Below, in pieces: positions 8,051 through 57,112 of a DNA stretch of 64,000 nt (positions within the stretch are counted from its first letter, which is position 1; every line of letters begins with the position of its first letter). Where the stretch lies: positions 112,220,001 through 112,284,000 of the forward strand of contig NC_043003.1 of assembly GCF_006345805.1 (NCBI RefSeq). Reading direction: 5' to 3'. The notes beneath the pieces were generated by a model that saw only the letters and a list, made by a program, of their open reading frames with translations, was not told where the DNA came from and did not search any database. Position numbers and translations under genes: made by a program. Source of the DNA: Octopus sinensis (Eukaryota).

Positions 8051-8073
8051 TGTGTGTGTGTTTGTGTGTATGT

Positions 8074-8364
8074 GGAGGCGCAATGGCCCAGTGGTTAGAG
8101 TAGCGGACTCGCGGTCGTAGGGTCGTGGTTTAGATTCCCAGACCGGGCGTTGTGAGTGTTTATTGAGCGATGCTTCGGCAGGGGGTGGTGGCTATCCCTG
8201 CTGTAGTCTTTTGCCACATCTTTCTCTCACGCTTTCTTCTGTTGACCTGCTCGCTTACCCAGCGGGGTGGCGTCATTTGAAGGCTAAAAACAATGCGAAG
8301 CGCATAGTGACCAGCGATGTGTAGCAAAATCTGATTGCTTGGTCGATCACGGTGATCATCACGT

Positions 8365-8368
<4 letters not shown>
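8074..8368 (+). mobile_element. tRNA-derived SINE, family C (tRNA-Arg-like head)
   Basis: GGAGGCGCAATGGCCCAGTGGTTAG A-box, TCG anticodon-like loop (GACTCGCGGTC), degenerate B-box, ends at (TA)n; related pieces at 29176 and 33120. Confidence 0.75.
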
Positions 8369-8407
<39 letters not shown>

Positions 8408-12192: not shown

Positions 12193-13808
12193 CAGTGGCG
12201 GCCAAAATGTTCAGAACGGCCTTATTTTCGTCAGAAAAGTAGATATAATTTTTTATCAAAGTTGTTTTATATACTATAATTTTCACAGACAATAAATACG
12301 ATATTATGTCTTATTGCCTGAGATTTCGGTGTAATTTTAGAGGATAATACAAGAGTTATGGAGGATTTAGTGATTTACTGCAAAACCAATGGCGGCCAAA
12401 ATTATTAGAACGGTTGCTTTTACTCCGTGTTTTAGTATATTTAACCGGCGAACTCTAATGTTTTGAATTTGTTTACGTGACGGTTCATTTACTAAACATT
12501 AGTACGAATATTTGCAGTGTACTTTGTTAATATAATGCCACTTACTCCGTTACCAATTCGTCAGCAGATTATTAAGCTTCGAAGGAAGGATAATTTAAGT
12601 ATTGGATCTATTGCAAAGATTGTTAACAAGCCAATAAGTGTTGTACACGGTATTCTTAAGGTCTACGATGATTGTGGTTCGTGTGAAGCAAGAAAGTTTA
12701 CAGGTAAGCCAAGAAAAACGACCAAGAGAGAAGATCGTGCTATGGTAAAGTTGGTTAAAAAGGACAGATTTAAAACTGCTGCTGCTGTTTCTCGGAAAAT
12801 GAGCATTTTATTGAAGAAAACTTTATCTCGAAAAACTGTGTCTCGTCGTTTAGTTGAACATGACCTACAAGCAAGAGCACCTGCAGTGAAGCCACTGATC
12901 ATCTCCAAAAATAAAAAAAGTGTCGTCTTACCTTTGCAACTGAACATGTGTTGTGGTCTCAAGAAAAATGGCAAATGGTGCATTTCAGTGGTGAATCTAA
13001 GTTTATGTTATTTATGTTATTTCGTAGAAAAGTAGCTGAAAACTTGTCACCTAAATGCCTTAAGACTAGTGTTAAATTCGGTGGAGGAAGTGTCATGGTT
13101 TGGGGGATCATATCTGGAAATGGTGTGGGCCCTTTGGTGCGATTACATGGAAAGGTAAATGCAGGAGTTTATAAACAACTTGTAAAAGATCATGTCTTGC
13201 CTGTGCTGAGAAATTCAACTAAGCGACCACCCATATTCATGCAGGACAATGCCCCATGTCACAAGGCTAAGGTGGTCATGAACTTCCTCAAGGCTGAAAA
13301 GGTTATTGTTATGGATTGGCCTGTTCAAAGCCCAGATCTCAATCCTATTGAAAATGTATGGAATATTATAGGAGAACGTTCGAAAGACAGAAATCCTAAA
13401 ACAACTGAGCGATTATGGAATGTCTTTCAGGAAGAATGGAATAAGATCACCCAGCAAGAAATTGAAAATTTAATTTCCTCATGCAGTCGAAGATGTCAGA
13501 GTGTGATTGAAGCTAAAGGACTTCACGCTAAATATTAAATAATTCCAGTATTCTCTGTCAAATTTTATTATTTTGTTATTTTTTCAACCGTTCTGATCAG
13601 TTTGGCCGCCATGGGTTTTGCAGTAAATCACTAAATCATCCATAACTTTTGTATTATGCTCTCAAATTACACCAAAATCTCAGAAAATAACAATTAATAT
13701 TGTACTTATTGTCTGTGAAAATTATAGAATATAAAACTACTTTGATAAAAACGTATACTTACTTTTCTGAGGAAAACAATGCCGTTCTGAACATTTTGGC
13801 CGCAACTG
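12193..13808 (+). mobile_element. Near full-length Tc1 element (1616 bp, ~225-bp IR/DR TIRs, TA target duplication)
   Basis: TA|CAGTGGCGGCCAAAATGTTCAGAACGG ... CCGTTCTGAACATTTTGGCCGCAACTG|TA; inner DRs near 12389-12414 and ~13589-13613. Confidence 0.95.
12535..13538 (+). pseudogene. Tc1 DD34E transposase, inactivated
   Basis: HTH N-terminus; frameshift near 12915; FSGESKF (first Asp replaced by Gly); short deletion; VKFGGGSVMVWG, FMQDNAPCH, WPVQSPDLNPIENVW; stop at 13538. Confidence 0.92.
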
Positions 13809-39590: not shown

Positions 39591-40031
39591 CTCAAAGAAG
39601 AAATCGTCTTTCACGTTAGTGATACCTTACCACGCTACAATGGGAACAGCATCTGATGTTATGATGTGCATTGAAATTATCTCACCGTGTGATTTAGGCA
39701 TCATCTCTAACCAACTACCAAAGCCTCATTATTGTCAATAATGGTCATTAATGGCGTAAACAATTCTTCTCTTCATGTAGTTCCAGTTCGTGAGAAGGTT
39801 TATTCCGTATCGCCATTATAGTGCGGTATCATTTATTTACCTTACGCTTAAATAAATAGATGAATGAATGGATAAATAAATAAAAAAACAACAAATAAAT
39901 AAATAAATAGAGAGGCATTTGAATAGAGTGATATAGTGATGGTTCGAAAGACAATGATAGAGAGCTACCAAAATAGTACATGGAGGAGATAGATTAGATA
40001 GGTAGACAGATAGATATATAGATAGATAGAT

Positions 40032-40422
40032 ATGTTTCTTTATTAGCCACACAGGGCTGCACACAGATAGAACAAATTACAAGGTAGAGCTTTTCTTTTT
40101 GGGGTAAAAAAGAAGGAGAGTGGTGGTTTTCGATCAAAAGGGATCGTAAAAGGAAAGAAAAAGGACAAAAAAAAAGGCAGGGGTTAAAAAAGGGGGGGGG
40201 GAGAGAAAAAAAATGAATAATAGGGATCGTTATCACAGAAATGTCAATATGAATTGTAAAGGGGAGGACAGGTGAGGTTTACCCGTGGAAAGAAAAGCCT
40301 ACGGAAAAGACCACGGTAACCTCGGTCAATGAAGTCACATGTTATATTTCTTTTTTTTTTTGCAAATAAGCAACTCTCTGTATTAATTTTTATGGTTCAT
40401 AGAATCATAGTCAAGGTGGCTT
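40032..40422 (-). mobile_element. L1/Tx1-type LINE 3' end, stacked copy 1 (3' UTR + last codons)
   Basis: Homologous to 40451-40840; 3' end CCCTGTGTGGCTAATAAAGAAACAT|(ATCT)n. Confidence 0.85.
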
Positions 40423-40450
40423 AGATAGATAGATAGATAGATAGATAGAT

Positions 40451-41431
40451 ATGTTTCTTTATTAGCCACACAGGGCTGCACACAGATAGAACAAATTACA
40501 AGGTAGAGCTTTTCTTTTGAGGGTTTAAAAAAAAAAAGGAAGGGGGAGTTTCGATCAAAAGGGATCGTAAAAGGAGAGAAAGAGGACAAAAAGAAGGGGG
40601 GTTAAAAAAAGGGGGGAGAGGAAAAAAAATTGATCAATAGGGATCGTTATCACAGAAATGTCAATATGAAGTGTAAAGGGGAGGACAGGTGAGGTTTACC
40701 CGTGGAAAGAAAAGCCTACGGAAAAGACCACGGTAACCTCGGTCAATGGAGTCACATGTTATATTTCCTTTTTTTTTTGCGAATAAGCAACTCTCTGTTT
40801 TCAATTTCTGGGTTCATAGGATCATGCTCAAGGGGGCTTCGTCATTCATACGTGCCATTCTTGCTACATTCACCCATCTTTTTTTAAAACATTCGCTAAA
40901 CAAAGCTTGCCTCTCTACTCTCACTTTCCTTTTCAAGTGGTACTTGAAGAAGTTGATGAGAGATTGACCAGAGAGGAAAGTGTTTGTCTCCAATCCTTTC
41001 AGACGCGTCCACCAGATACATTCTTTCGCCATAGCCACAAGGATGATGAAAATAGCTCTTCCTTCCCGTTTGAAGGAGGGAGGCGTGACAATATTGACGA
41101 TAGACTCAGCTGATAAACCGACACGTCCCACACGTGACAGCAGTTGTTCGACATAAGCCCACAGGTCGGAAATTGTTGGACACTGCACGAGTGCGTGCAG
41201 AACGGTTTCGTCGCTCTGACCGCATCTCGGGCAGGTCGGCCCCGTGTTTCTCGCGCCGTGTCTGTAGAGCTTATCCCGAACGGGTAGCGCTTCTCGGTAG
41301 CACTGCCAGGCCAGGGATCTCTGGAAGTTGTCCATGGGCCCTGGCCCGAAAGTCGTCCTGAACAGGCGGGTCAGGTACTCCTCGTCTACGTCCAGGTTCG
41401 CCCCGAGCTCTTCGTCGTACCTCCCCTCCAC

Positions 41432-41432
<1 letters not shown>
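40451..41432 (-). mobile_element. L1/Tx1-type LINE 3' end, stacked copy 2 (intact C-terminal CCHC zinc-knuckle region)
   Basis: FQRSLAWQCYREALPVRDKLY..CPRCGQSDETVLHALVQCP..LSMIL*, then 3' UTR with AATAAA; both ends in (AGAT)n. Confidence 0.9.
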
Positions 41433-41466
<34 letters not shown>

Positions 41467-41475
41467 GTAGGTAGG

Positions 41476-41553
<78 letters not shown>

Positions 41554-41564
41554 CATAGATAGAT

Positions 41565-41602
<38 letters not shown>

Positions 41603-41617
41603 GTAGATAGATGGATG

Positions 41618-41661
<44 letters not shown>

Positions 41662-41678
41662 TATAGATAGATAGAAAA

Positions 41679-41759
<81 letters not shown>

Positions 41760-41771
41760 AAGATAGATAGG

Positions 41772-41836
<65 letters not shown>
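41433..41836. repeat. (AGAT)n tetranucleotide array
   Basis: Directly visible. Confidence 0.97.
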
Positions 41837-41838
<2 letters not shown>

Positions 41839-42834
41839 GTTTCTTTATTGGCCACACAGGGCTGCACACAGATGGGACAAGTTACAAGGTAGAGCTTCTC
41901 TTTTGGGGGATGAAGAGAACAAAAAACAAAAGAAAAAAAAGGGGGTGGCGTAGGTTTTCGATCAAGAGGGATCGTAAAAGGGAAGAAAAGAACAAAAAAA
42001 ATTGAATAAAATAAAAAGAATAAAAAGAAAAAAAAAGAAAAGTAAAAGGAACAAAAGGAAAGAGAAATGAAAAAAGAAGAAAAAAGGGGAAAAAAAGGGG
42101 AAGAGGAAAAAATAAGAACGATCAATAGGGATCGTGTATCACAGTGTTATGATATATGGTGTAAAGGGGAAAGCAAGTAAGGTTTATCCGTGGGAAGAAA
42201 AGCCTACGAAAAAGACCACGGTAACCTTGGTCAATATTGTTACATGTTACCACATTTGTTTGCAAGTGGGTAACCCTCTGTTTTCAATTTCTGGGTTCAT
42301 AGGATTATGCTCAAGGTGGCTTCGTCATTCATACGTGCCATCCTTGCTACATTCACCCATCTTTTTTTAAAACATTCGCTAGACAAAACTTGCCTCTCTA
42401 CTCTCACTTTCCTTTTCAAGTGGTACTTGAAGAAGTTGATGAGAGATTGACCAGAGAGGAAAGTGTTTGTCTCCAATCCTTTCAGACGCGTCCACCAGAT
42501 ACATTCTTTCGCCATAGCCACAAGGATGATGAAAATAGCTCTTCCTTCCCGTTTGAAGGAAGGAGGCGTGACAATATTGACGATAGACTCAGCTGATAAA
42601 CCGACACGTGACAGCAGTTGTTCGACATAAGCCCACAGGTCGGAAATTGTTGGACACTGCACGAGTGCGTGCAGAACGGTTTCGTCGCTCTGACCGCATC
42701 TCGGGCAGGTCGGCCCCGTGTTTCTCGAGCCGTGTCTGTAGAGCTTATCCCGAACGGGTAGCGCTTCTCGGTAGCACTGCCAGGCCAGGGATCTCTGGAA
42801 GTTGTCCATAGGACCTGGCCCGAAATTCGTCCTG
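41837..42834 (-). mobile_element. L1/Tx1-type LINE 3' end, stacked copy 3
   Basis: Coding part nearly identical to copy 2 (12-nt deletion at LLSRV-GL); distinct 3' UTR variant. Confidence 0.9.
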
Positions 42835-42861
42835 ATAGATAGATAGATAGAAAGTCGTCCT

Positions 42862-42940
<79 letters not shown>

Positions 42941-43037
42941 GGATGGATGGATGGATGGATGGATGGATGGATGGATAGGCGGAGGTACGGAGGGACGGAT
43001 AGAAAGACAGACAGACTGATAGAACATAGACAGATTG

Positions 43038-44690
43038 ATTCTTTATTAGCCACACAGGGATGAATACAGAGGGGACAATACAATGTAGAACTTTTCTTTT
43101 CGAAAGAAAGATAGATAGAAAAAAGAAAAGAAAAATTGAAATCAAATGGGATCGAAAGCGTTTGGGACCTGTAAACAGCAAAATAAGGGGGTGTAAAAAG
43201 TGTAAATCAGATTAGATTTCTCCTTGGAAAGAAAAGCCTACGAAAAAGACCACCGTAACCTTAGGTAGGGAAAGAAACATATGAGAGGAAAACTCTCTCC
43301 CTCCCTCTCTCTCTCTCTCTTTTGGACTTACAGGATCATGCTCAAAGTGGTTCCGTCATTCACGTGTAACATCTTTGCAACATTCACCCGCCTTTTACTG
43401 AAATTTTCATGAGACAAACCTTCCCTCTTGGTTGGATGGCATGGGCATTTTTCTTCAGGTGCCAAGCCGCAAACCCACTAATTTTTCCGAATTATTTTCG
43501 TTCCCGTTACTGCTTCGAATTCTTTTAGTGTCTCGTCGACCAGGTCGATGTAATTGTGGCTCGACACTATCACGGTGATATCGTTCACGTATGCAGACAG
43601 GCTTCTCCCTCATCACCGTTCATGCGGGATGTCCCACAGCGTAGTTAGTTTCCGCAATGTTGGCTCTAGAGTCAATAAATACAGAAGCGACGAGAGGGGG
43701 CATCATTGACGGACCGAATGCGTGATGTTAAATGGTCTGGATGCATGACCATTTACGCGAACTACCGAGTGGATGCCGCTGTATAAGGCAGCGATCCTAC
43801 CGTGGAAGTCGGGACCGAATCCAGCCGCTATAAGGACAGCCTGTAAGTAACGATGGTTGACCTTATCGAAAGCTTTCGATTCATCCAAATTAATCAGCGC
43901 CCGACAAATGCCGGGTTCCTTAACTATCCTGTCTATGATATAGCGTATCAGATGGAGGTTGTTACGGATACTCCTGCCCGTCACGGTGCATGTTTTCGCT
44001 TGTCGACCAGTTCCTCCATGACTAGCGACAACATCTCGGCTAGCACCTTGGCCAAAATTTTCAAGTCTGCGTTGAGCAGACTGATAGGCCTGAAGTTATG
44101 TATGACGTTTCCCTTTCATTAGCAGTGCCACCGCTCATCGGCTCACAAAACTGGGGAAACTCGCGTTTTGCTGCCAGTTGCAGTAAACTGCTGCCAAGAC
44201 GCCTCCAAACAAGTCTGGCATAAGAACAATGTACATTATTACTATCCACTGCCCTACAGAATACTCTATCCAAATACGATCTGGACGCCCGATGCGGTTG
44301 CTCCATGTCAACACTGGTAAAATCGGGTGGTCTAATCAGTACCTCTCAGACAGTTGGAACCTCTGAGCAGGTCTTTAAGGCATTTACATCCCTCTTTTCG
44401 TATCTCTACCCATGTAGACAACATGCATGTCCAACGTAGCGTTCCAATCCCCCACTAAATGTAACGGTCGAGACGTTCCCAAGAAAACGTCTAGACGTCG
44501 AAAGAAATACGGCCAACCTGTTAATGACGGTGCATAAACTGTTATCAGTCGAAATGCAAACATATTACTGCCATTGACATCTAAGACGACGAGCCTACGC
44601 TTCGGTTCTAGGAATATTGCTCTTACTTTGAGGTCCAGAATCTTCCGAAAAAGCACTGCTGTACCATCTCCGCCCAATCTCGGCAGATAC
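43038..44690 (-). mobile_element. L1/Tx1-type LINE ORF2 remnant, stacked copy 4 (APE + RT, internally deleted)
   Basis: APE TVYAP..GDWN (44441-44452)..SDH; RT DESKAFD (43865-43885), RQ*CPLS, SAYVNDIT; fused by deletion to ..LSMIL* and the same 3' end. Confidence 0.85.
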
Positions 44691-44708
44691 TGAGAAAAAA
44701 ATATACAA

Positions 44709-45056
44709 GGCGCAGGATTGGCTGTGTGGTAAGTAGCTTGCTTACCAACCACATGGTTCCGGGTTCAGTTCCACTGCGTGGAATCTTGGGCAAGTGTCTT
44801 CTGCTATAGCCTCGGGCCGACCAATGCCTTGTGAGTGGATTTGGTAGACGGAAACTGAAAGAAGCCTGTCGTATATATGTGTATATATATATGTATGTGT
44901 GTGTATTTGTTTGTGTGTCTGTGTTTGTCCCCCCGCACCATCGCTTGACAACCGATGCTGGTGTGTTTACGACCCCGTCACTTAGCGGTTCGGCAAAAAG
45001 AGACCGATAGAATAAGAACTGTGTTTACAAAGAATAAGTCCCGGGGTCGATTTGCT
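44709..45056 (+). mobile_element. SINE family A (tRNA head, CORE-like domain)
   Basis: GGCGCAGGA.TGGCTGTGTGGTAAG A-box, GGTTCAGTTCC B-box, CTTGGGCAAGTGTCTTCT CORE-like segment. Confidence 0.9.
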
Positions 45057-45424
45057 TTCGTCATTATTCGTATAGTCGTTGTTAAAAAGTGTGTGTGTGT
45101 GTTTGTGACAGTGTATCAATGTTTTGATTGTTATTCGAAGTTTTCGTTGTTGGCAATGGTGGAAATTCGAGTTCAAATTTAAAGAAGAGAACGCGGGCAG
45201 TCTTAGGAAGACTATCCATTTTTCCAGAGAGATGAAAAAAATTTATAAAATAAGATTTGAAAATTTGAAAATTTACACTCAAAGGGTGAATCCTCAAGCG
45301 AAAGCTTCAATTGAGGCCACGGAAAAGGTGTTAGGTACCTTTTTAACACAGGGAAATACAGATACACATAAATAAAACCGAAAGAGTACCTCACTTTACG
45401 GGAGTCGACGTGACAAGCAGGCAA

Positions 45425-45880
<456 letters not shown>

Positions 45881-46543
45881 TATGATGGCTGCAGTAAAAA
45901 CAGCCTTCCAGCACACGAAAATGAAGTAAGTGAAATCTCCTGGGAAATCGCAGGATAGTCAATCTTATTACGTTTGTTTTGTGTGTTATAAATTTTCGAC
46001 ACGTGTATGGAAATGTGAATATTTCTAAATCTCTGTATAATTATTTGCTCATATAAATTTATGTCCGCACGAGTGCTGTTATATTTTATTTTATTTCCAT
46101 TTTTTCTTGTCTAATGCAAGGAGAAATTGCTGAATGTTATCTGATAGTGTATTTTATTGATAAAATTCACTGAGTAGACAAAAACGAGACCAGGCACATC
46201 AAAACCTTTACACAACAGCAATACAATTAGTCTGAAAACGTTACACATTTCCATTGGCATTTTGTGCTAGACGGTGTACGTCATATTAACGTTATGGTTT
46301 CCAGGAGATATGTCATATCGTTAATCAAATTTATACCTATCTCTCCATATATTCTGTCATACTGCGCTCGACATGAGGAGGTGAAAAATTTAGACAAGAG
46401 TAGAGAGATAGACCAGACAAATCAAGATGAGACACATACAACGATACCAAACGATAATACGTACCTGTTGGTAGGCATATGTGTGCGCCTCCCTATAAAT
46501 GTAAATACATATATTCATACATATGTGTGTATATATATATATA

Positions 46544-46593
<50 letters not shown>

Positions 46594-46628
46594 CATTCAC
46601 TTCTGGTGGTATGGTGCATATATATGTA

Positions 46629-46673
<45 letters not shown>

Positions 46674-46685
46674 TTAGGCTCAGGA

Positions 46686-47654
46686 TAGGTTGTGTGGTAA
46701 GGAGCTTGATTAGGTTATGGTTGTCGAGTTGCATTGTTGGATCTGTTTGGCACACACATATTTTTGGGGCTGTCCTGGCAGAGCGACGTTTTCCCTCTTG
46801 TATAGTCGAGGTATTCTTCCAAATAATGTGATTCGTCTGAGGAGGAATCACTTGAATACTTAAAGAAGATAGACTAAGAAATGGAGAAGAGGAATTATGC
46901 AGCAGCAGCAGCAAGAGAAAAATTTGAAGTGAGTCTGGAAGAGTTGAGCGAGTTTAGGGAAATGCTTGAAAGGGAGAGGAACGATGTGAAGGTGCCCCAC
47001 TCCAAAAAAGTACTAAAGGACAAGGAAGAAAGGACGATCGTCTGTAGAACCTACGCTACAGCAACAAGGAAAATAGAAGTGGTGTCGAAAGCACAGGTAG
47101 AAAAGGCACCGAGGTTAGTCTGTCAGGAGATATACCTCACCAGGGAACGAAAATATGGAAGTGCAGTTTAAGGATATAGCAACTGCCAGTCTGTGCTTGG
47201 CCACACTGCTGAAGACAGACGAGGTGGTGCTTGTACCCGTGTACCTTGGGAGACGTACTTCCAGGGTTCGGGTGGAATACCAACCACCAGAAGTGAATGT
47301 AGCCTGGCTGGTAGCTGCCATACTGCGAGTGGTGGAAGAAAAAAATGACATCTGTAAAATGTCGGAAAGAATAAGGTACGTCGACATTTTAAACAAATAT
47401 AATATAGACATTAAAAAAAATATGTGGAATGACTGTTGTCAATGAACTGAAAAGATGTATAAACTAGGCGCAGGAGTGGCTGAGTGATAAGCAGCTTGAT
47501 TACCAACTAAATGGTCCCGGGTTCAGTCCCACTGCGTGGCACATTCGGCAAGTGTCTTCTACTATAGCCTCGGTCCGACTAAAGACTTGTGAGCAGATTT
47601 GGTGGACAGAAACTGAAAGAAGCTCATCGTTTTATAAATATATATATGTATATA

Positions 47655-52230: not shown

Positions 52231-52310
52231 CATATACAGATATATATACACATACACATATACATACATATATATATACACACACACACATACACATATA
52301 TATATACATA
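50055..52310. repeat. Long degenerate (CA/TA)n microsatellite tracts (interrupted at ~50510-50640 and ~50880-51475)
   Basis: Directly visible. Confidence 0.9.
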
Positions 52311-54155
52311 TATATAAATTATTAGAGAGTTATCCACTATGTGGATAACTCTAGTGCTAAAAATAGCTCCGAAGCAACCACAGAAGATCCGTTTCCAACT
52401 AGAATCAACACACATTTAACTGAAGGAAAGTGAAATACAACGAATAAAAGAGATTGACTCTATACAATTGTTTCATTACTAATGCAATATGTAGTGTTAC
52501 TTACACTTGCATCTATCTATAATCTTCGGTAAAGTTTGTCAGAAATGCAATTAATTAGATCGATTCGGGCGTCAAAAACACGAGCGGTCCAACCAATTAC
52601 ATTTTTAGTTATGTCTCAAATTCCGCGCCAAAAGCATGCCTAGACTCCATTGGAAACGTATGCCGCATCAAATAAAATATTGACTGCCGCGTAGTTAAAT
52701 TTATAAAATTATAAATGAGGGTGAAAAATCGATATTAATTTAATAATACCGTCAATTTAACACCAAGTGGCTTAGCACAAAAAACTACGGAGGAAATACA
52801 AATTTATACATAAATTATTAGAGAGTTATCCACTATGTGGATAACTCTAGTGCTAAAAATAGCTCCGAAGCAACCACAGAAGATCCGTTTCCAACTAGAA
52901 TCAACACACATTTAACTGAAGGAAAGTGAAATACAACGAATAAAATAGATTGACTCTATACAATTGTTTCATTACTAATGCAATATGTAGTTTTACTTAC
53001 ACTTGCATCTATAAATCTTCGGTAGAGTTTGTCAGAATGCAATTAATTAGATCGATTCGGGCGTCAAAAACACGAGCGGTCCAACCAATTACATTTTTAG
53101 TTATGTCTCAAATCCGCGCCAAAAGCATGCCTAGACTCCATTGGAAACGTATGCCGCATCAAATAAAATATTGACTGCCGCGTAGTTAAATTTATAAAAT
53201 TATAAATGAGGGTGAAAAATCGATATTAATTAATAATACCGTCAATTTAACACCAAGTGGCTTAGCACAAAAAACTACGGAGGAAATACAATTTATACAT
53301 AAATTATTAGAGAGTTATCCACTATGTGGATAACTCTAGTGCTAAATATAGCTCCGAAGCAACCACAGAAGATCCGTTTCCAACTAGAATCAACACACAT
53401 TTAACTGAAGGAAAGTGAAATACAACGATAAAATAGATTGACTCTATACAATTGTTTCATTACTAATGCAATATGTAGTTTTACTTACACTTGCATCTAT
53501 AAATCTTCGGTAGAGTTTGTCAGAAATGCAATTAATTAGATCGATTCGGGCGTCAAAAACACGAGCGTCCAACCAATTACATTTTTAGTTATGTCTCAAA
53601 TTCCGCGCCAAAAGCATGCCTAGACTCCATTGGAAACGTATGCCGCATCAAATAAAATATTGACTGCCGCGTAGTTAAATTTATAAAATTATAAATGAGG
53701 GTGAAAAATCGATATTAATTTAATAATACCGTCAATTTAACACCAAGTGGCTTAGCACACAAAACTACGGAGGAAATACAAATTTATACATAAATTATTA
53801 GAGAGTTATCCACTATGTGGATAACTCTAGTGCTAAAAATAGCTCCGAAGCAACCACAGAAGATCCGTTTCCAACTAGAATCAACACATTTAACTGAAGG
53901 AAAGTGAAATACAACGAATAAAATAGATTGACTCTATACAATTGTTTCATTACTAATGCAATATGTAGTTTTACTTACACTTGCATCTATAAATCTTCGG
54001 TAGAGTTTGTCAGAAATGCAATTAATTAGATCGATTCGGGCGTCAAAAACACGAGCGGTCCAACCAATTAAATTTTTAGTTATGTCTCAAATTCCGCGCC
54101 AAAAGCATGCCTAGACTCCATTGGAAACGTATGCCGCATCAAATAAAATATTGAC
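52311..54155 (+). repeat. Tandem array of ~493-bp units, forward arm (~3.7 units)
   Basis: AGAGAGTTATCC recurs at 52324, 52820, 53309, 53800. Confidence 0.97.
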
Positions 54156-56693
54156 TAATAATTTATGTATAAATTTGTATTTCCTCCGTAGTTTTTTGTG
54201 CTAAGCCACTTGGTGTTAAATTGACGGTATTATTAAATTAATATCGATTTTTCACCCTCATTTATAATTTTATAAATTTAACTACGCGGCAGTCAATATT
54301 TTATTTGATGCGGCATACGTTTCCAATGGAGTCTAGGCATGCTTTTGGCGCGGAATTTGAGACATAACTAAAAATGTAATTGGTTGGACCGCTCGTGTTT
54401 TTGACGCCCGAATCGATCTAATTAATTGCATTTCTGACAAACTCTACCGAAGATTTATAGATGCAAGTGTAAGTAAAACTACATATTGCATTAGTAATGA
54501 AACAATTGTATAGAGTCAATCTATTTTATTCGTTGTATTTCACTTTCCTTCAGTTAAATGTGTGTTGATTCTAGTTGGAAACGGATCTTCTGTGGTTGCT
54601 TCGGAGCTATTTTTAGCACTAGAGTTATCCACATAGTGGATAACTCTCTAATAATTTATGTATAAATTTGTATTTCCTCCGTAGTTTTTTGTGCTAAGCC
54701 ACTTGGTGTTAAATTGACGGTATTATTAAATTAATATCGATTTTTCACCCTCATTTATAATTTTATAAATTTAACTACGCGGCAGTCAATATTTTATTTG
54801 ATGCGGCATACGTTTCCAATGGAGTCTAGGCATGCTTTTGGCGCGGAATTTGAGACATAACTAAAAATGTAATTGGTTGGACCGCTCGTGTTTTTGACGC
54901 CCGAATCGATCTAATTAATTGCATTTCTGACAAACTCTACCGAAGATTTATAGATGCAAGTGTAATAGAGTCAATCTATTTTATTCGTTGTATTTCACTT
55001 TCCTTCAGTTAAATGTGTGTTGATTCTAGTTGGAAACGGATCTTCTGTGGTTGCTTCGGAGCTATTTTTAGCACTGGAGTTATCCACATAGTGGATAACT
55101 CTCTAATAATTTATGTATAAATTTGTATTTCCTCCGTAGTTTTTTGTGCTAAGCCACTTGGTGTTAAATTGACGGTATTATTAAATTAATATCGATTTTT
55201 CACCCTCATTTATAATTTTATAAATTTAACTACGCGGCAGTCAATATTTTATTTGATGCGGCATACGTTTCCAATGGAGTCTAGGCATGCTTTTGGCGCG
55301 GAATTTGAGACATAACTAAAAATGTAATTGGTTGGACCGCTCGTGTTTTTGACGCCCGAATCGATCTAATTAATTGCATTTCTGACAAACTCTACCGAAG
55401 ATTTATAGATGCAAGTGTAAGTAAAACTACATATTGCATTAGTAATGAACAATTGTATAGAGTCAATCTATTTTATTCGTTGTATTTCACTTTCCTTCAG
55501 TTAATGTGTGTTGATTCTAGTTGGAAACGGATCTTCTGTGGTTGCTTCGGAGCTATTTTTAGCACTAGAGTTATCCACATAGTGGATAACTCTCTAATAA
55601 TTTATGTATAAATTTGTATTTCCTCCGTATTTTTGTGTGCTAAGCCACTTGGTGTTAAATTGACGGTATTATTAAATTAATATCGATTTTTCACCCTCAT
55701 TTATAATTTTATAAATTTAACTACGCGGCAGTCAATATTTTATTTGATGCGGCATACGTTTCCAATGGAGTCTAGGCATGCTTTTGGCGCGGAATTTGAG
55801 ACATAACTAAAAATGTAATTGGTTGGACCGCTCGTGTTTTTGACGCCCGAATCGATCTAATTAATTGCATTTCTGACAAACTCTACCGAAGATTTATAGA
55901 TGCAAGTGTAAGTAAAACTACATATTGCATTAGTAATGAAACATTGTATAGAGTCAATCTATTTTATTCGTTGTATTTCACTTTCCTTTAGTTAAATGTG
56001 TGTTGATTCTAGTTGGAAACGGATCTTCTGTGGTTGCTTCGGAGCTATTTTTAGCACTAGAGTTATCCACATAGTGGATAACTCTCTAATAATTTATGTA
56101 TAAATTTGTATTTCCTCCGTAGTTTTTTGTGCTAAGCCACTTGGTGTTAAATTGACGGTATTATTAAATTAATATCGATTTTTCACCCTCATTTATAATT
56201 TTATAAATTTAACTACGCGGCAGTCAATATTATTTGATGCGGCATACGTTTCCAATGGAGTCTAGGCATGCTTTTGGCGCGGAATTGAGACATAACTAAA
56301 AATGTAATTGGTTGGACCGCTCGTGTTTTTGACGCCCGAATCGATCTAATTAATTGCATTTCTGACAAACTCTACCGAAGATTTATAGATGCAAGTGTAA
56401 GTAAAACTACATATTGCATTAGTAATGAAACAATTGTATAGAGTCAATCTATTTTATTCGTTGTATTTCACTTTCCTTCAGTAAATGTGTGTTGATTCTA
56501 GTTGGAAACGGATCTTCTGTGGTTGCTTCGGAGCTATTTTTAGCACTAGAGTTATCCACATAGTGGATAACTCTCTAATAATTTATGTATAAATTTGTAT
56601 TTCCTCCGTAGTTTTTTGTGCTAAGCCACTTGGTGTTAAATTGACGGTATTATTAAATTAATATCGATTTTTCACCCTCATTTATAATTTTAT
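54156..56693 (-). repeat. Tandem array of the same ~493-bp unit, inverted arm (~5.2 units)
   Basis: TAATAATTTATG recurs at 54156, 54649, 55104, 55595, 56087, 56576; reverse complement of the forward unit. Confidence 0.97.
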
Positions 56694-57112
56694 ATACATA
56701 TATATACATATATATATACACATATATATATACATATATATATACATACTTACACACATGTACATATAAATACACACATAGATAACTCTACGTACCTACA
56801 TATACATAAACACACGAGCTTACGCGTATATGTACATATACACATACACATACACACGCATATATATACATACATACATACACATACACACATGTATACA
56901 CACACACATATACACATATATATACATACACATATATATACATATATATATATACATATATATATACATATATATATACATATACATACACACATACACA
57001 CACATATATACATGTGTGCAAACATACATAGATTCTCATACAAGCACACACACTTACATTTACATATATACACATACTTACACACATATTATATATATAT
57101 ATATTATATATA

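What the first reader, a model, noticed from the sequence alone, without database searches (positions are those of the whole stretch)
52311..56693. 493-bp satellite array that inverts mid-way into a multi-kilobase palindrome with a 134-bp spacer
About 3.7 forward units meet about 5.2 inverted units at 54155/54156. Complementary arms end at 54156 and start at 54291, leaving a 134-bp spacer made of unit sequence, with 1-nt microhomology. The left arm is ~1.85 kb. The whole is embedded in (CA/TA)n, lacks ORFs and matches nothing else in the window. A short-spacer fold-back is the known signature of hairpin-capped breaks or replication template switching, and tandem-repeat-built inverted arms also typify Foldback-type transposons. 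It could be an undescribed foldback element, a rolling-circle product, or a long-read fold-back artefact.
Basis: partly seen in the sequence, partly recalled or inferred. Interest (0 to 1): 0.76.

Follow-up and report, generated by a model that had tools for sequence, protein, structure and literature searches.

The report
Fold-back tandem retroelement, Penelope-type insertion
The inverted 493-bp repeat array is real and is one copy of a young, non-coding jumping-element family (about 100-150 copies) in an octopus-type genome; its tandem-plus-inverted shape matches the known insertion signature of Penelope-like retroelements, so it is neither an assembly artefact nor a new kind of fold-back DNA transposon.

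Summary
Observation confirmed. Window 52315-54156 holds 3.7 forward units. Window 54157-56694 holds 5.2 inverted units. The innermost arms are 100% complementary across a 134-nt spacer.

The unit is dispersed: I counted 103 'T2' ends, at least 57 'T1' ends and about 268 internal unit junctions on many chromosomes, diverging by roughly 1%.

Features shared by the copies sampled:
- Each sits in a (TA)n tract.
- Both arms read the same strand from outside in.
- One end is T1 (unit position 1, beside a 12-bp stem-loop). The other is T2 (position ~384), in 37 of 38 two-armed copies.
- Each locus has its own centre, joined by 0-9 nt microhomology or short filler.
- All units of a copy share one haplotype.

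Target duplications of 8 and 18 bp, one abutting a truncated end, indicate copy-in during insertion, not cut-and-paste.

A second, unrelated 484-bp family shares the terminal 20 nt and the same architecture.

Tandem copies, an inverted 5'-truncated copy, an extension at one end and AT-rich/(TA)n targets are the published signature of Penelope-like elements. Those enzymes prime from both target strands at two internal sites. The genome carries thousands of GIY-YIG candidates.

The autonomous partner was not identified. This is a new member of a known kind; interest is moderate.

The parts
52290..52316 (.). Candidate left target-site duplication (27 nt), directly abutting the T1 end
   Evidence: The same 27-mer recurs at 56716-56742. 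It lies in a low-complexity context, so it is only a candidate.
52315..52325 (+). T1 end: outer terminus of the left arm (unit position 1), where (TA)n meets TAAATTATTAG
   Evidence: The same terminus occurs at 57 exact genomic sites and at one end of 37 of 38 two-armed copies.
52326..52352 (.). 12-bp-stem hairpin (loop TAT) 11 nt inside T1. It is repeated once per unit in both arms.
   Evidence: The fold of the minus-sense RNA gives -20.6 kcal/mol, z -5.2. The subfamily variant T>C at unit position 17 keeps the pair as G.U only in the minus-sense RNA.
52315..54156 (+). Left arm: 3 full units plus a partial unit to position 366. In RNA sense this is the inverted, 5'-truncated copy.
54157..54161 (.). 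Centre junction: 4-5 nt not assignable to either arm by exact extension. This junction is unique to this locus.
54157..54290 (-). 134-nt 'spacer': unit sequence (about positions 367-493 plus the start of the next unit) present only in the right arm
   Evidence: (I9)
54162..56585 (-). Right arm: five inverted units. The second (54655-55113) carries a ~35-nt deletion.
56582..56694 (-). Terminal 111-nt 'b' segment (unit 383-493), present at this end only. It corresponds to the one-sided 'tail' extension of Penelope-like insertions and ends in the T2 terminus.
   Evidence: One-sided in 37 of 38 copies.
56695..56715 (.). TA-rich 21-nt tract between the T2 end and the right copy of the candidate duplication
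56716..56742 (.). Candidate right target-site duplication (27 nt)

Best explanation
The locus is one insertion of a young, non-coding, non-autonomous retroelement with a ~493-nt monomer. It was most likely mobilised in trans by a Penelope-like element (reverse transcriptase plus GIY-YIG nuclease).

Proposed mechanism. Steps marked S are shown by sequence; steps marked I are inferred.
1. The template is single-stranded and of one polarity, the 'minus' sense of my unit numbering. Every arm in every copy reads plus sense from the outside in (S).
2. A staggered break is made in AT-rich DNA, usually a (TA)n tract, giving target duplications of variable length (S: 8 and 18 bp; 27 bp candidate here).
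3. Both 3' ends of the break prime DNA synthesis on the template at two internal start sites 111 nt apart. T2 is CACCCUCAUUUAUAAUU..UAUA after a GGUG..CACC stem. T1 is CUCUAAUAAUUUAUGUAUA after a 12-bp stem-loop. Hence one end carries the extra 111-nt 'b' segment and the other does not (geometry S; enzyme I).
4. Synthesis runs through several unit lengths of one template haplotype, so all units of both arms are born identical (S for the identity; I for 'rolling' or repeat-addition copying).
5. The two same-sense products meet head-to-head and are joined by microhomology, filler or an end-to-end template jump. This gives a locus-specific centre that is often nearly symmetric (S for the junctions; I for the process).

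In the window, T1 is at 52315, the centre is at 54156/54162 and T2 is at 56694.
For: - Dispersal and youth: at least 39 loci in the first search. 103 T2 ends, 57 exact T1 ends, 268 internal unit junctions. Between-element substitution divergence has median 1.0%.
- Polarity and order: plus arm then minus arm at every two-armed locus. The only minus-then-plus adjacency is between two neighbouring duplicate elements.
- Ends: 37 of 38 two-armed copies pair T1 with T2; L049 is T2-T2.
- Centres: all differ, with 0-9 nt overlap or 4-18 nt filler. Near-symmetric centres are enriched: 17 of 38 have |X-Y| <= 60, p = 0.005.
- Copy-in rather than cut-and-paste: an 18-bp direct repeat flanks L035. An 8-bp repeat flanks C6:43486742-43488125, where one end is T2 plus (TA)10 and the other is truncated at unit position 283 with 9-nt filler abutting the repeat. 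'One-armed' copies join (TA)n at TA microhomology or keep only ~9 nt of T1.
- One haplotype per element: 123 element-by-variant cases are fixed in all pieces and about 10 are not. Within-element polymorphisms comprise 138 singletons, 1 arm-specific and 13 other.
- A second family with 484-bp units, unrelated except for the terminal ~20 nt plus (TA)n, has the same tandem and fold-back layout.
- Stem-loop followed by CUC..AU-rich..UAUA occurs at T1, T2 and the second family's end.
- Published PLE signature: partial tandems, an adjacent inverted 5'-truncated copy, a 30-40-bp 'tail' at one end, (TA)n as preferred Naiad target, and non-autonomous multicopy head-to-tail relatives (PMC8557442). TSDs of 8-10 bp or none, microhomology junctions, palindromes at head-to-head junctions, and pLTR sufficient in trans (PMC3846280). 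A purified PLE protein cleaves and extends both strands and starts reverse transcription at two internal sites next to a stem-loop, with the 'tail' being the sequence between them (PMC11167929).
- The genome holds 5029 first-look GIY-YIG candidates. 147 scored above the Pfam cut-off, many with identical scores and in open frames of 600-883 aa. Penelope is listed among recently active repeats of Octopus vulgaris (PMC13282606).
Against: - No autonomous element sharing the T1/T2 sequences was identified.
- No hammerhead or other ribozyme was found. Canonical PLE pLTRs and animal retrozymes carry one, although Naiad-type PLEs do not.
- The 'tail' here is 111 nt, against 30-40 nt reported.
- Craig et al. 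describe cephalopod Naiads as ancient remnants, so the (TA)n-targeting clade may not be the active one here.
- An RNA intermediate is inferred from polarity, target duplications and one G.U-compatible variant. It was not observed.
- Only two target duplications are unambiguous, because most flanks are (TA)n.
- PLE transcripts are thought to be multicopy. That does not by itself explain why every element is born from a single unit haplotype.
Confidence: 0.6

Rival explanations
1. A LINE-dependent retroposon (RTE, Dong or another clade with a microsatellite tail). The fold-back arises by classical twin priming, as in L1 5' inversions, on multimeric transcripts.
For: The same core evidence applies: polarity, variable target duplications, 5' truncation with microhomology, and a TA-rich tract on the T2 side. 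LINEs with microsatellite tails exist in this window. RTE and Dong are reported as active in octopus (PMC9115989).
Against: About three quarters of sampled copies are inverted (37 independent two-armed against 11 one-armed). From my own knowledge, about a quarter of L1 insertions are. Three features are described as PLE-specific and not seen in LINE target-primed reverse transcription: multicopy tandems, a strict pair of start sites, and a one-sided extension. R2 and L1 proteins extend only the bottom strand in vitro.
Confidence: 0.17
2. DNA-level event. Breaks in fragile (TA)n tracts are repaired by microhomology-primed synthesis on a unit-length extrachromosomal circle of the repeat (rolling circle), with a template switch creating the inversion. 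This would be satellite dispersal without a dedicated enzyme.
For: All units of a copy are one haplotype, as expected from a monomer circle. The junctions to (TA)n are fuzzy by 2-4 nt and lie in the two longest AT-only stretches of the unit. The centres use microhomology or filler.
Against: A double-stranded circle would give arms of either polarity; only one polarity is seen in all sampled copies. Target duplications of 8 and 18 bp require a staggered cut. Two unrelated families share a specific 20-nt terminus beside a stem-loop, which points to enzyme recognition. Other TATA-containing sites of the unit are almost never used as outer ends.
Confidence: 0.1
3. A Foldback/Mutator-type DNA transposon, like Drosophila FB or the (TA)n-targeting MuTAnT of Medicago. 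New centres would arise from abortive gap repair or palindrome-centre deletion.
For: It has a fold-back shape with tandem-repeat arms. It is embedded in (TA)n, as MuTAnT is (PMC4486113). T1 and T2 share a weak motif, ATAAA(A)TTAT..GAG.G. At least 8-10 bp of TA lies on each side, compatible with a 9-bp duplication.
Against: Duplications of 8 and 18 bp do not fit a fixed 9-bp cut. A truncated end abuts a duplication. No arm-specific variants exist and all units share one haplotype, so arrays are rebuilt at each insertion. No two independent loci share a centre. No copy with a coding centre was seen. T1 lacks the 20-nt terminus that T2 shares with the second family.
Confidence: 0.06
4. An assembly or long-read fold-back artefact at this locus.
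For: Homopolymer-type indels among units suggest noisy long reads. Three loci show tandem duplicates of element plus flank that could be haplotype mis-joins.
Against: The same bounded palindrome, with T1 and T2 ends and different unique flanks on each side, recurs at 48 sampled loci, and the end sequences recur at more than 100 genomic sites. A missed-adapter read would mirror the flanks too.
Confidence: 0.01

Closest known systems
Insertion architecture of Penelope-like elements (Penelope/Poseidon, Neptune, Naiad): pLTR partial tandems, an adjacent inverted 5'-truncated copy and a one-sided 'tail'
   Same: Head-to-tail copies with a head-to-head inverted truncated copy. An extension at one end only, lying between two start sites. 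5' truncation. Short, variable or absent target duplication. Microhomology or palindromic inverted junctions. AT-rich/(TA)n targets.
   Different: There is no ORF and no detectable similarity to a PLE (none could be compared). The extension is 111 nt, not 30-40 nt. No hammerhead motif is present. The fold-back is almost obligatory. Arrays reach 5-6 units per arm.
Animal 'non-LTR retrozymes' and Chlamys non-autonomous elements such as MRC1 (non-coding tandem elements thought to be mobilised by PLEs)
   Same: Short non-coding monomers are inserted as multicopy head-to-tail arrays at dispersed sites. Mobilisation in trans via terminal cis sequences is presumed. A rolling-type copying has been proposed for retrozymes.
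   Different: Retrozymes are defined by a hammerhead ribozyme that makes circular RNA, and none is detected here. Systematic inversion and (TA)n targeting are not described as defining features for them in the texts I read.
L1 twin priming (5' inversion)
   Same: Both target 3' ends prime on one RNA. The inversion junction has microhomology, small gaps or duplications. Target duplication is retained (my own knowledge).
   Different: Twin priming occurs in a minority of L1 insertions and at arbitrary internal sites. Here it is the rule, uses one defined second site, and comes with tandem multimers.
MuTAnT (Medicago) and Drosophila FB / Tetris fold-back DNA transposons
   Same: Fold-back with modular or tandem-repeat arms. 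MuTAnT sits in (TA)n microsatellites. Tetris seeds satellite DNA.
   Different: Those have true inverted termini, a fixed 9-bp duplication and a transposase partner. Here the ends are unlike, the duplications vary and truncation occurs at insertion.

Membership tests
Penelope-like-element-mobilised (non-autonomous) retroelement | Copies inserted as partial or multicopy head-to-tail tandems | tested here: met
   There are 0-6 units per arm at 48 loci. The sister family has 484-bp tandems.
Penelope-like-element-mobilised (non-autonomous) retroelement | Adjacent inverted 5'-truncated copy, head-to-head | tested here: met
   37 independent two-armed copies against 11 one-armed. The 3' ends always point outward.
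Penelope-like-element-mobilised (non-autonomous) retroelement | Short extension ('tail') at only one end, delimited by two reverse-transcription start sites near a stem-loop | tested here: met
   The b segment (unit 383-493) is at one end in 37 of 38 copies. Stem-loops precede T1 and T2. Its length is 111 nt, against 30-40 nt published.
Penelope-like-element-mobilised (non-autonomous) retroelement | Target-primed insertion: variable or absent target duplication, 5' truncation, microhomology junctions, AT-rich target | tested here: met
   Duplications of 8 and 18 bp, with a 27-bp candidate. Truncated ends carry TA microhomology or filler. Every copy has (TA)n flanks.
Penelope-like-element-mobilised (non-autonomous) retroelement | Sequence shared with the 3'/pLTR region of an autonomous RT + GIY-YIG element in the same genome | not testable with these tools
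   GIY-YIG copies are abundant, with open frames up to 883 aa.
Penelope-like-element-mobilised (non-autonomous) retroelement | Hammerhead ribozyme in the repeated unit (canonical PLE pLTRs, retrozymes; absent in Naiad/Chlamys) | tested here: not met
   There is no ribozyme match at gathering score or at E <= 5 on either strand, nor in the sister family. This excludes 'retrozyme' in the strict sense. It does not exclude PLE dependence.
Foldback / Mutator-like DNA transposon (FB, MuTAnT) | Matching terminal inverted repeats and a fixed-length (9-bp) target duplication | tested here: not met
   T1 and T2 differ, with about 15 of 21 positions matching once gaps are allowed. Duplications are 8 and 18 bp.
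Foldback / Mutator-like DNA transposon (FB, MuTAnT) | Copies related by descent of the whole element (shared centres, arm-specific variants) | tested here: not met
   All independent centres differ. One arm-specific variant was found, against 123 element-wide fixed cases.
Helitron / HUH rolling-circle transposon | No target duplication, insertion between A and T, 5' TC / 3' CTRR ends with a 3' hairpin | tested here: not met
   Target duplications are present. The termini are not TC/CTRR. The hairpin lies near T1 only.
SINE (tRNA-derived head plus LINE tail) | Pol III head with A/B boxes; 3' end shared with a LINE | tested here: not met
   No tRNA was found. The apparent match of T2 to a SINE tail in L062 proved to be a truncated copy of the sister family lodged in a SINE's microsatellite.

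The most novel reading that the evidence does not exclude
The elements are copied from a unit-length template, either a circular RNA made without any known ribozyme or a terminally redundant monomer RNA. A telomerase-related PLE reverse transcriptase re-aligns on that template again and again (repeat-addition or rolling reverse transcription) from both target strands at once. This would explain three things together: why every unit of both arms is one haplotype, why the two ends always use the two different start sites present once per monomer, and why two unrelated families both have ~485-495-nt units. The families would then be a natural read-out of an undescribed 'double-primed rolling' mode of retrotransposition that seeds fold-back satellites.
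Probability: 0.22. Interest if true: 0.75.

Novelty: new member of a known kind. Interest (0 to 1): 0.5.

Why it matters
How Penelope-like elements integrate is still largely unknown. The published work I read calls for explanations of their tandem/inverted structures, the one-sided 'tail' and the microsatellite bias.

This small non-coding family gives more than 100 young insertions with base-resolved junctions. A sister family gives more. These insertions display, in a genome, the behaviour seen once in vitro: priming from both target strands at two internal sites. They add two quantitative observations that current models do not explain. The two start sites are paired almost without exception. 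Each insertion passes through a single-unit bottleneck.

It also shows a concrete route by which dispersed, palindromic mini-satellites arise in (TA)n tracts. Other 'inverted satellite' notes for this genome may have the same origin. Such loci should be treated as real, not as assembly errors.

Tried and rejected
- Ribozyme/retrozyme: Rfam found nothing relevant at gathering score on the whole window, nor at E <= 5 on 1.5 kb of the array and on the sister family.
- tRNA: none.
- 'T2 equals the 3' tail of a tRNA-derived SINE': I held this view after and dropped it. The shared module belongs to a second fold-back family, and one truncated copy sits in a SINE's microsatellite tail.
- Whole-unit homology between the two families: local alignment scored 71, against 59.5 +/- 8.6 for shuffles. 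Only the terminal ~20 nt are shared.
- Two polymerases confined to the same circle without overtaking: this predicts arm-length differences between -382 and +111 nt. Many copies violate that, unless arms are trimmed or unit numbers change later.
- Simple snap-back of one nascent strand: rejected because the T1 arm is often longer than the T2 arm and the ends are unlike.
- Autonomous partner: ORFs in the window and in 180 kb of fetched loci gave only LINE reverse transcriptases, a DDE_3 fragment and a PIF1 helicase. A GIY-YIG regular-expression scan found nothing credible. Cross-checking the coordinates of GIY-YIG hits and element ends by eye showed no adjacency.
- Earlier scan notes: none by place or sequence. 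Two notes on other inverted satellites of this genome turned up by words.
I did not try to read genome sequence by other means.
Full report
**1. Observation**

The array is as described. Tandem Repeats Finder gives 52309-54156 (period 489, 3.8 copies, 98% matches) and 54957-56694 (period 491, 98%). With one unit as query (window 52811-53303 = unit positions 1-493), BLAST finds forward units from 52315 to 54156, the last ending at unit position 366. It finds inverted units from 54162 to 56694, the last being only positions 383-493. The innermost arms 53884-54156 and 54291-54563 are 100% complementary with 134 nt between them. The flanks are (CA/TA)n. No ORF of 100 aa or more lies inside. Nothing else in the window matches. 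The window is C7:112220001-112284000 of a 2.72-Gb, 13,516-contig assembly. Earlier notes of this scan call the genome octopus-type; I did not verify the species. It is not human.

**2. It is a dispersed family**

The unit hits dozens of loci on many chromosomes at 95-99% identity, most with forward units followed by inverted units. Pattern counts give:
- 103 ends of one type, T2;
- 57 exact ends of the other type, T1;
- 268 internal unit junctions.

That amounts to roughly 100-150 elements and no large satellite block.

**3. Anatomy common to all copies**

(a) Every copy lies in a TA-rich tract with at least 8-10 bp of TA on each side. Often a different microsatellite lies beyond it.

(b) Both arms read the same strand from the outside inwards. 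The reverse order never occurs within an element.

(c) The outer ends are of two kinds. T1 is (TA)n-[C/T]A-TAAATTATTAGAG at unit position 1, 11 nt from a 12-bp-stem hairpin. T2 is (TA)n-TA[A/T]AATTATAAATGAGGGTG at position ~384. Of 38 two-armed copies, 37 pair T1 with T2 (one of these has T1 shortened by 17 nt), so the 111-nt segment 383-493 is present at one end only. L049 is T2-T2.

(d) The centre differs at every independent locus. It shows 0-9 nt of overlap or 4-18 nt of filler. Centres are nearly symmetric more often than chance: 17 of 38 lie within 60 nt, p = 0.005. In copies shorter than one unit per arm this is almost always the case, for example 123|123, 140|141 and 104|101.

(e) Sizes run from 83 bp to more than 4 kb.

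(f) 'One-armed' copies end at arbitrary unit positions, joined to (TA)n through a TA overlap, or keep only ~9 nt of T1.

**4. Copy-in, not cut-and-paste**

L035 is flanked by an 18-bp direct repeat containing the distinctive TTTGC.

The copy at C6:43486742-43488125 has T2 plus (TA)10 on one side. On the other side it is truncated at unit position 283 with 9 nt of filler. An 8-bp direct repeat flanks it, in a target that is not (TA)n.

Duplications of different lengths, one of them abutting a truncated end, mean a staggered break and truncation during insertion. In the window a 27-mer (52290-52316 and 56716-56742) brackets the element, with a 21-nt TA-rich tract on the T2 side. The context is low-complexity, so I rate it a candidate only. 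In all three cases the TA-rich tract is on the T2 side and T1 abuts the duplication.

**5. Each element is born from one unit haplotype**

I aligned 93 full units and then all partial and terminal pieces.
- Recurrent substitutions are all-or-none within an element: 123 fixed cases against about 10 mixed, ignoring the T2 junction columns.
- Within-element differences comprise 138 singletons, 1 arm-specific variant and 13 others.
- Sub-lineages are nested and mix long and short copies.
- Median substitution divergence is 1.0% between elements and 0.4-0.6% within.

So both arms come from the same template. The arrays are rebuilt from a single unit at, or soon after, each insertion; they are not inherited as arrays. 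One widespread variant (T>C at unit position 17, in 45 of 93 units) turns a stem pair of the hairpin into G.U in the minus-sense RNA, but into a C.A mismatch on the other strand. This is a small hint that the minus-sense RNA is the functional form.

**6. A sister family**

Searching the T2 end with one mismatch exposed a recurrent variant with 192 copies. I first took it for the tail of a tRNA-derived SINE, and that was wrong. One search showed an element with this end on both sides. One search showed a family with ~484-bp units in tandem and fold-back arrangement with locus-specific centres, for example C18:24931924-24933432 and C6:46124405-46126150. Its unit is unrelated to ours apart from the terminal ~20 nt and the TA tract. 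In the minus-sense RNA, T1, T2 and this family's end all read 'stem-loop, then CUC..., 10-14 AU-rich nt, then UAUA'.

**7. Comparison with what is known**

No ribozyme or tRNA was found.

Fold-back DNA transposons, including the (TA)n-targeting MuTAnT, do not fit sections 4 and 5.

The published signature of Penelope-like elements does fit:
- frequent 5' truncation, partial tandems, an inverted 5'-truncated copy adjacent, a 30-40-bp 'tail' at one end, (TA)n as a preferred Naiad target, and non-autonomous relatives that insert as multicopy head-to-tail arrays (PMC8557442);
- target duplications of 8-10 bp or none, microhomology junctions, palindromes at head-to-head junctions, and mobilisation in trans through pLTR sequences (PMC3846280);
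- a purified PLE protein that, unlike R2 or L1, cleaves and extends both target strands, prefers AT-rich DNA and starts reverse transcription at two internal sites by a stem-loop, the 'tail' being the sequence between them (PMC11167929).

Here T1 and T2 would be the two start sites, and the 111-nt segment would be the tail. The genome has 5029 first-look GIY-YIG candidates. 147 scored above the Pfam cut-off, many with identical scores and open frames of 600-883 aa. I take these, by inference, for a young PLE family. Penelope is listed among recently active repeats in Octopus vulgaris (PMC13282606).

**8. What remains open**

- I could not read any GIY-YIG element, so the partner is unproven.
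- The RNA intermediate is inferred.
- The near-absolute pairing of the two start sites, and the single-unit bottleneck without a ribozyme, are not explained by the published model of multicopy transcripts. A unit-length or terminally redundant template copied repeatedly by a telomerase-related enzyme would explain both, but this is speculation (probability about 0.2).

**9. Verdict**

- It is one copy of a young family of non-autonomous retroelements with a Penelope-type insertion architecture (confidence 0.6; any target-primed retro-type mechanism about 0.75-0.8).
- It is not an artefact and not a Foldback DNA transposon.
- It is a new member of a known kind, and interest is moderate.

Noticed in passing
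G000 C18:24931924-24933432, C6:46124405-46126150, C1:35913030-35913600 (L063), C1:47937900-47938500 (L062): A second non-coding family ('M') has ~484-bp units. It has 192 ends of the form (TA)n-TAATTAAAAATGAGGGTGTCTAAAAGACACC and the same tandem plus fold-back layout with locus-specific centres. It is unrelated to the 493-bp unit except for the terminal ~20 nt.
   Followed up: partly
L032 (C3:27077926-27082936); C8:14250646-14256004; C28:17849435-17852237: Whole element plus ~0.5-1 kb of flank occurs twice in tandem, with periods of 3246, 3146 and 1647 bp. The two copies share the same centre and unit-specific mutations. In L032 they have 2+2 against 1+1 full units. These are either real local duplications or two haplotypes assembled in series.
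   Followed up: partly
window 40000-47000, minus strand: A LINE-like element has zf-RVT ORFs at 40814-43181. Its ~420-bp 3' end is present twice in tandem (about 40060-40420 and 40480-40840), each copy ending in an (ATCT)n tail.
   Followed up: no
G000, e.g. C6:12733272, C6:12759897, C3:65736423, C1:207477583, C19:35627265, C10:27570372: GIY-YIG domains have identical Pfam scores in open frames of 781-883 aa, among 5029 first-look candidates. This looks like a young, possibly intact Penelope-like element family.
   Followed up: partly
C3:120296397-120299893 (locus C3_120296397): This copy is flanked by (CT)n(TA)n on the left and (TA)n(GA)n on the right, so the flanking microsatellites are themselves inverted repeats of each other.
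   Followed up: no
window 8071-8390; L062:150-535; L036:8832-9003: A dispersed repeat has a tRNA-like head (A/B-box-like motifs judged by eye). ARAGORN and Rfam do not call it a tRNA. It is probably an octopus SINE family with a TG/TA microsatellite tail.
   Followed up: partly
window 12948-13538 (+); L039:521-1219 (-): There is a DDE_3 (Tc1/mariner-type) transposase fragment in the window. There is also a PIF1-like helicase ORF (E 5e-56, Helitron-like) 3.5 kb from one element. Neither is linked to the family.
   Followed up: no
window 52315-52814: The outermost forward unit carries four private substitutions within 80 nt (unit positions 136, 182, 203, 215). They are not mirrored in the other arm. 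This is either a local mutation cluster or assembly noise.
   Followed up: no
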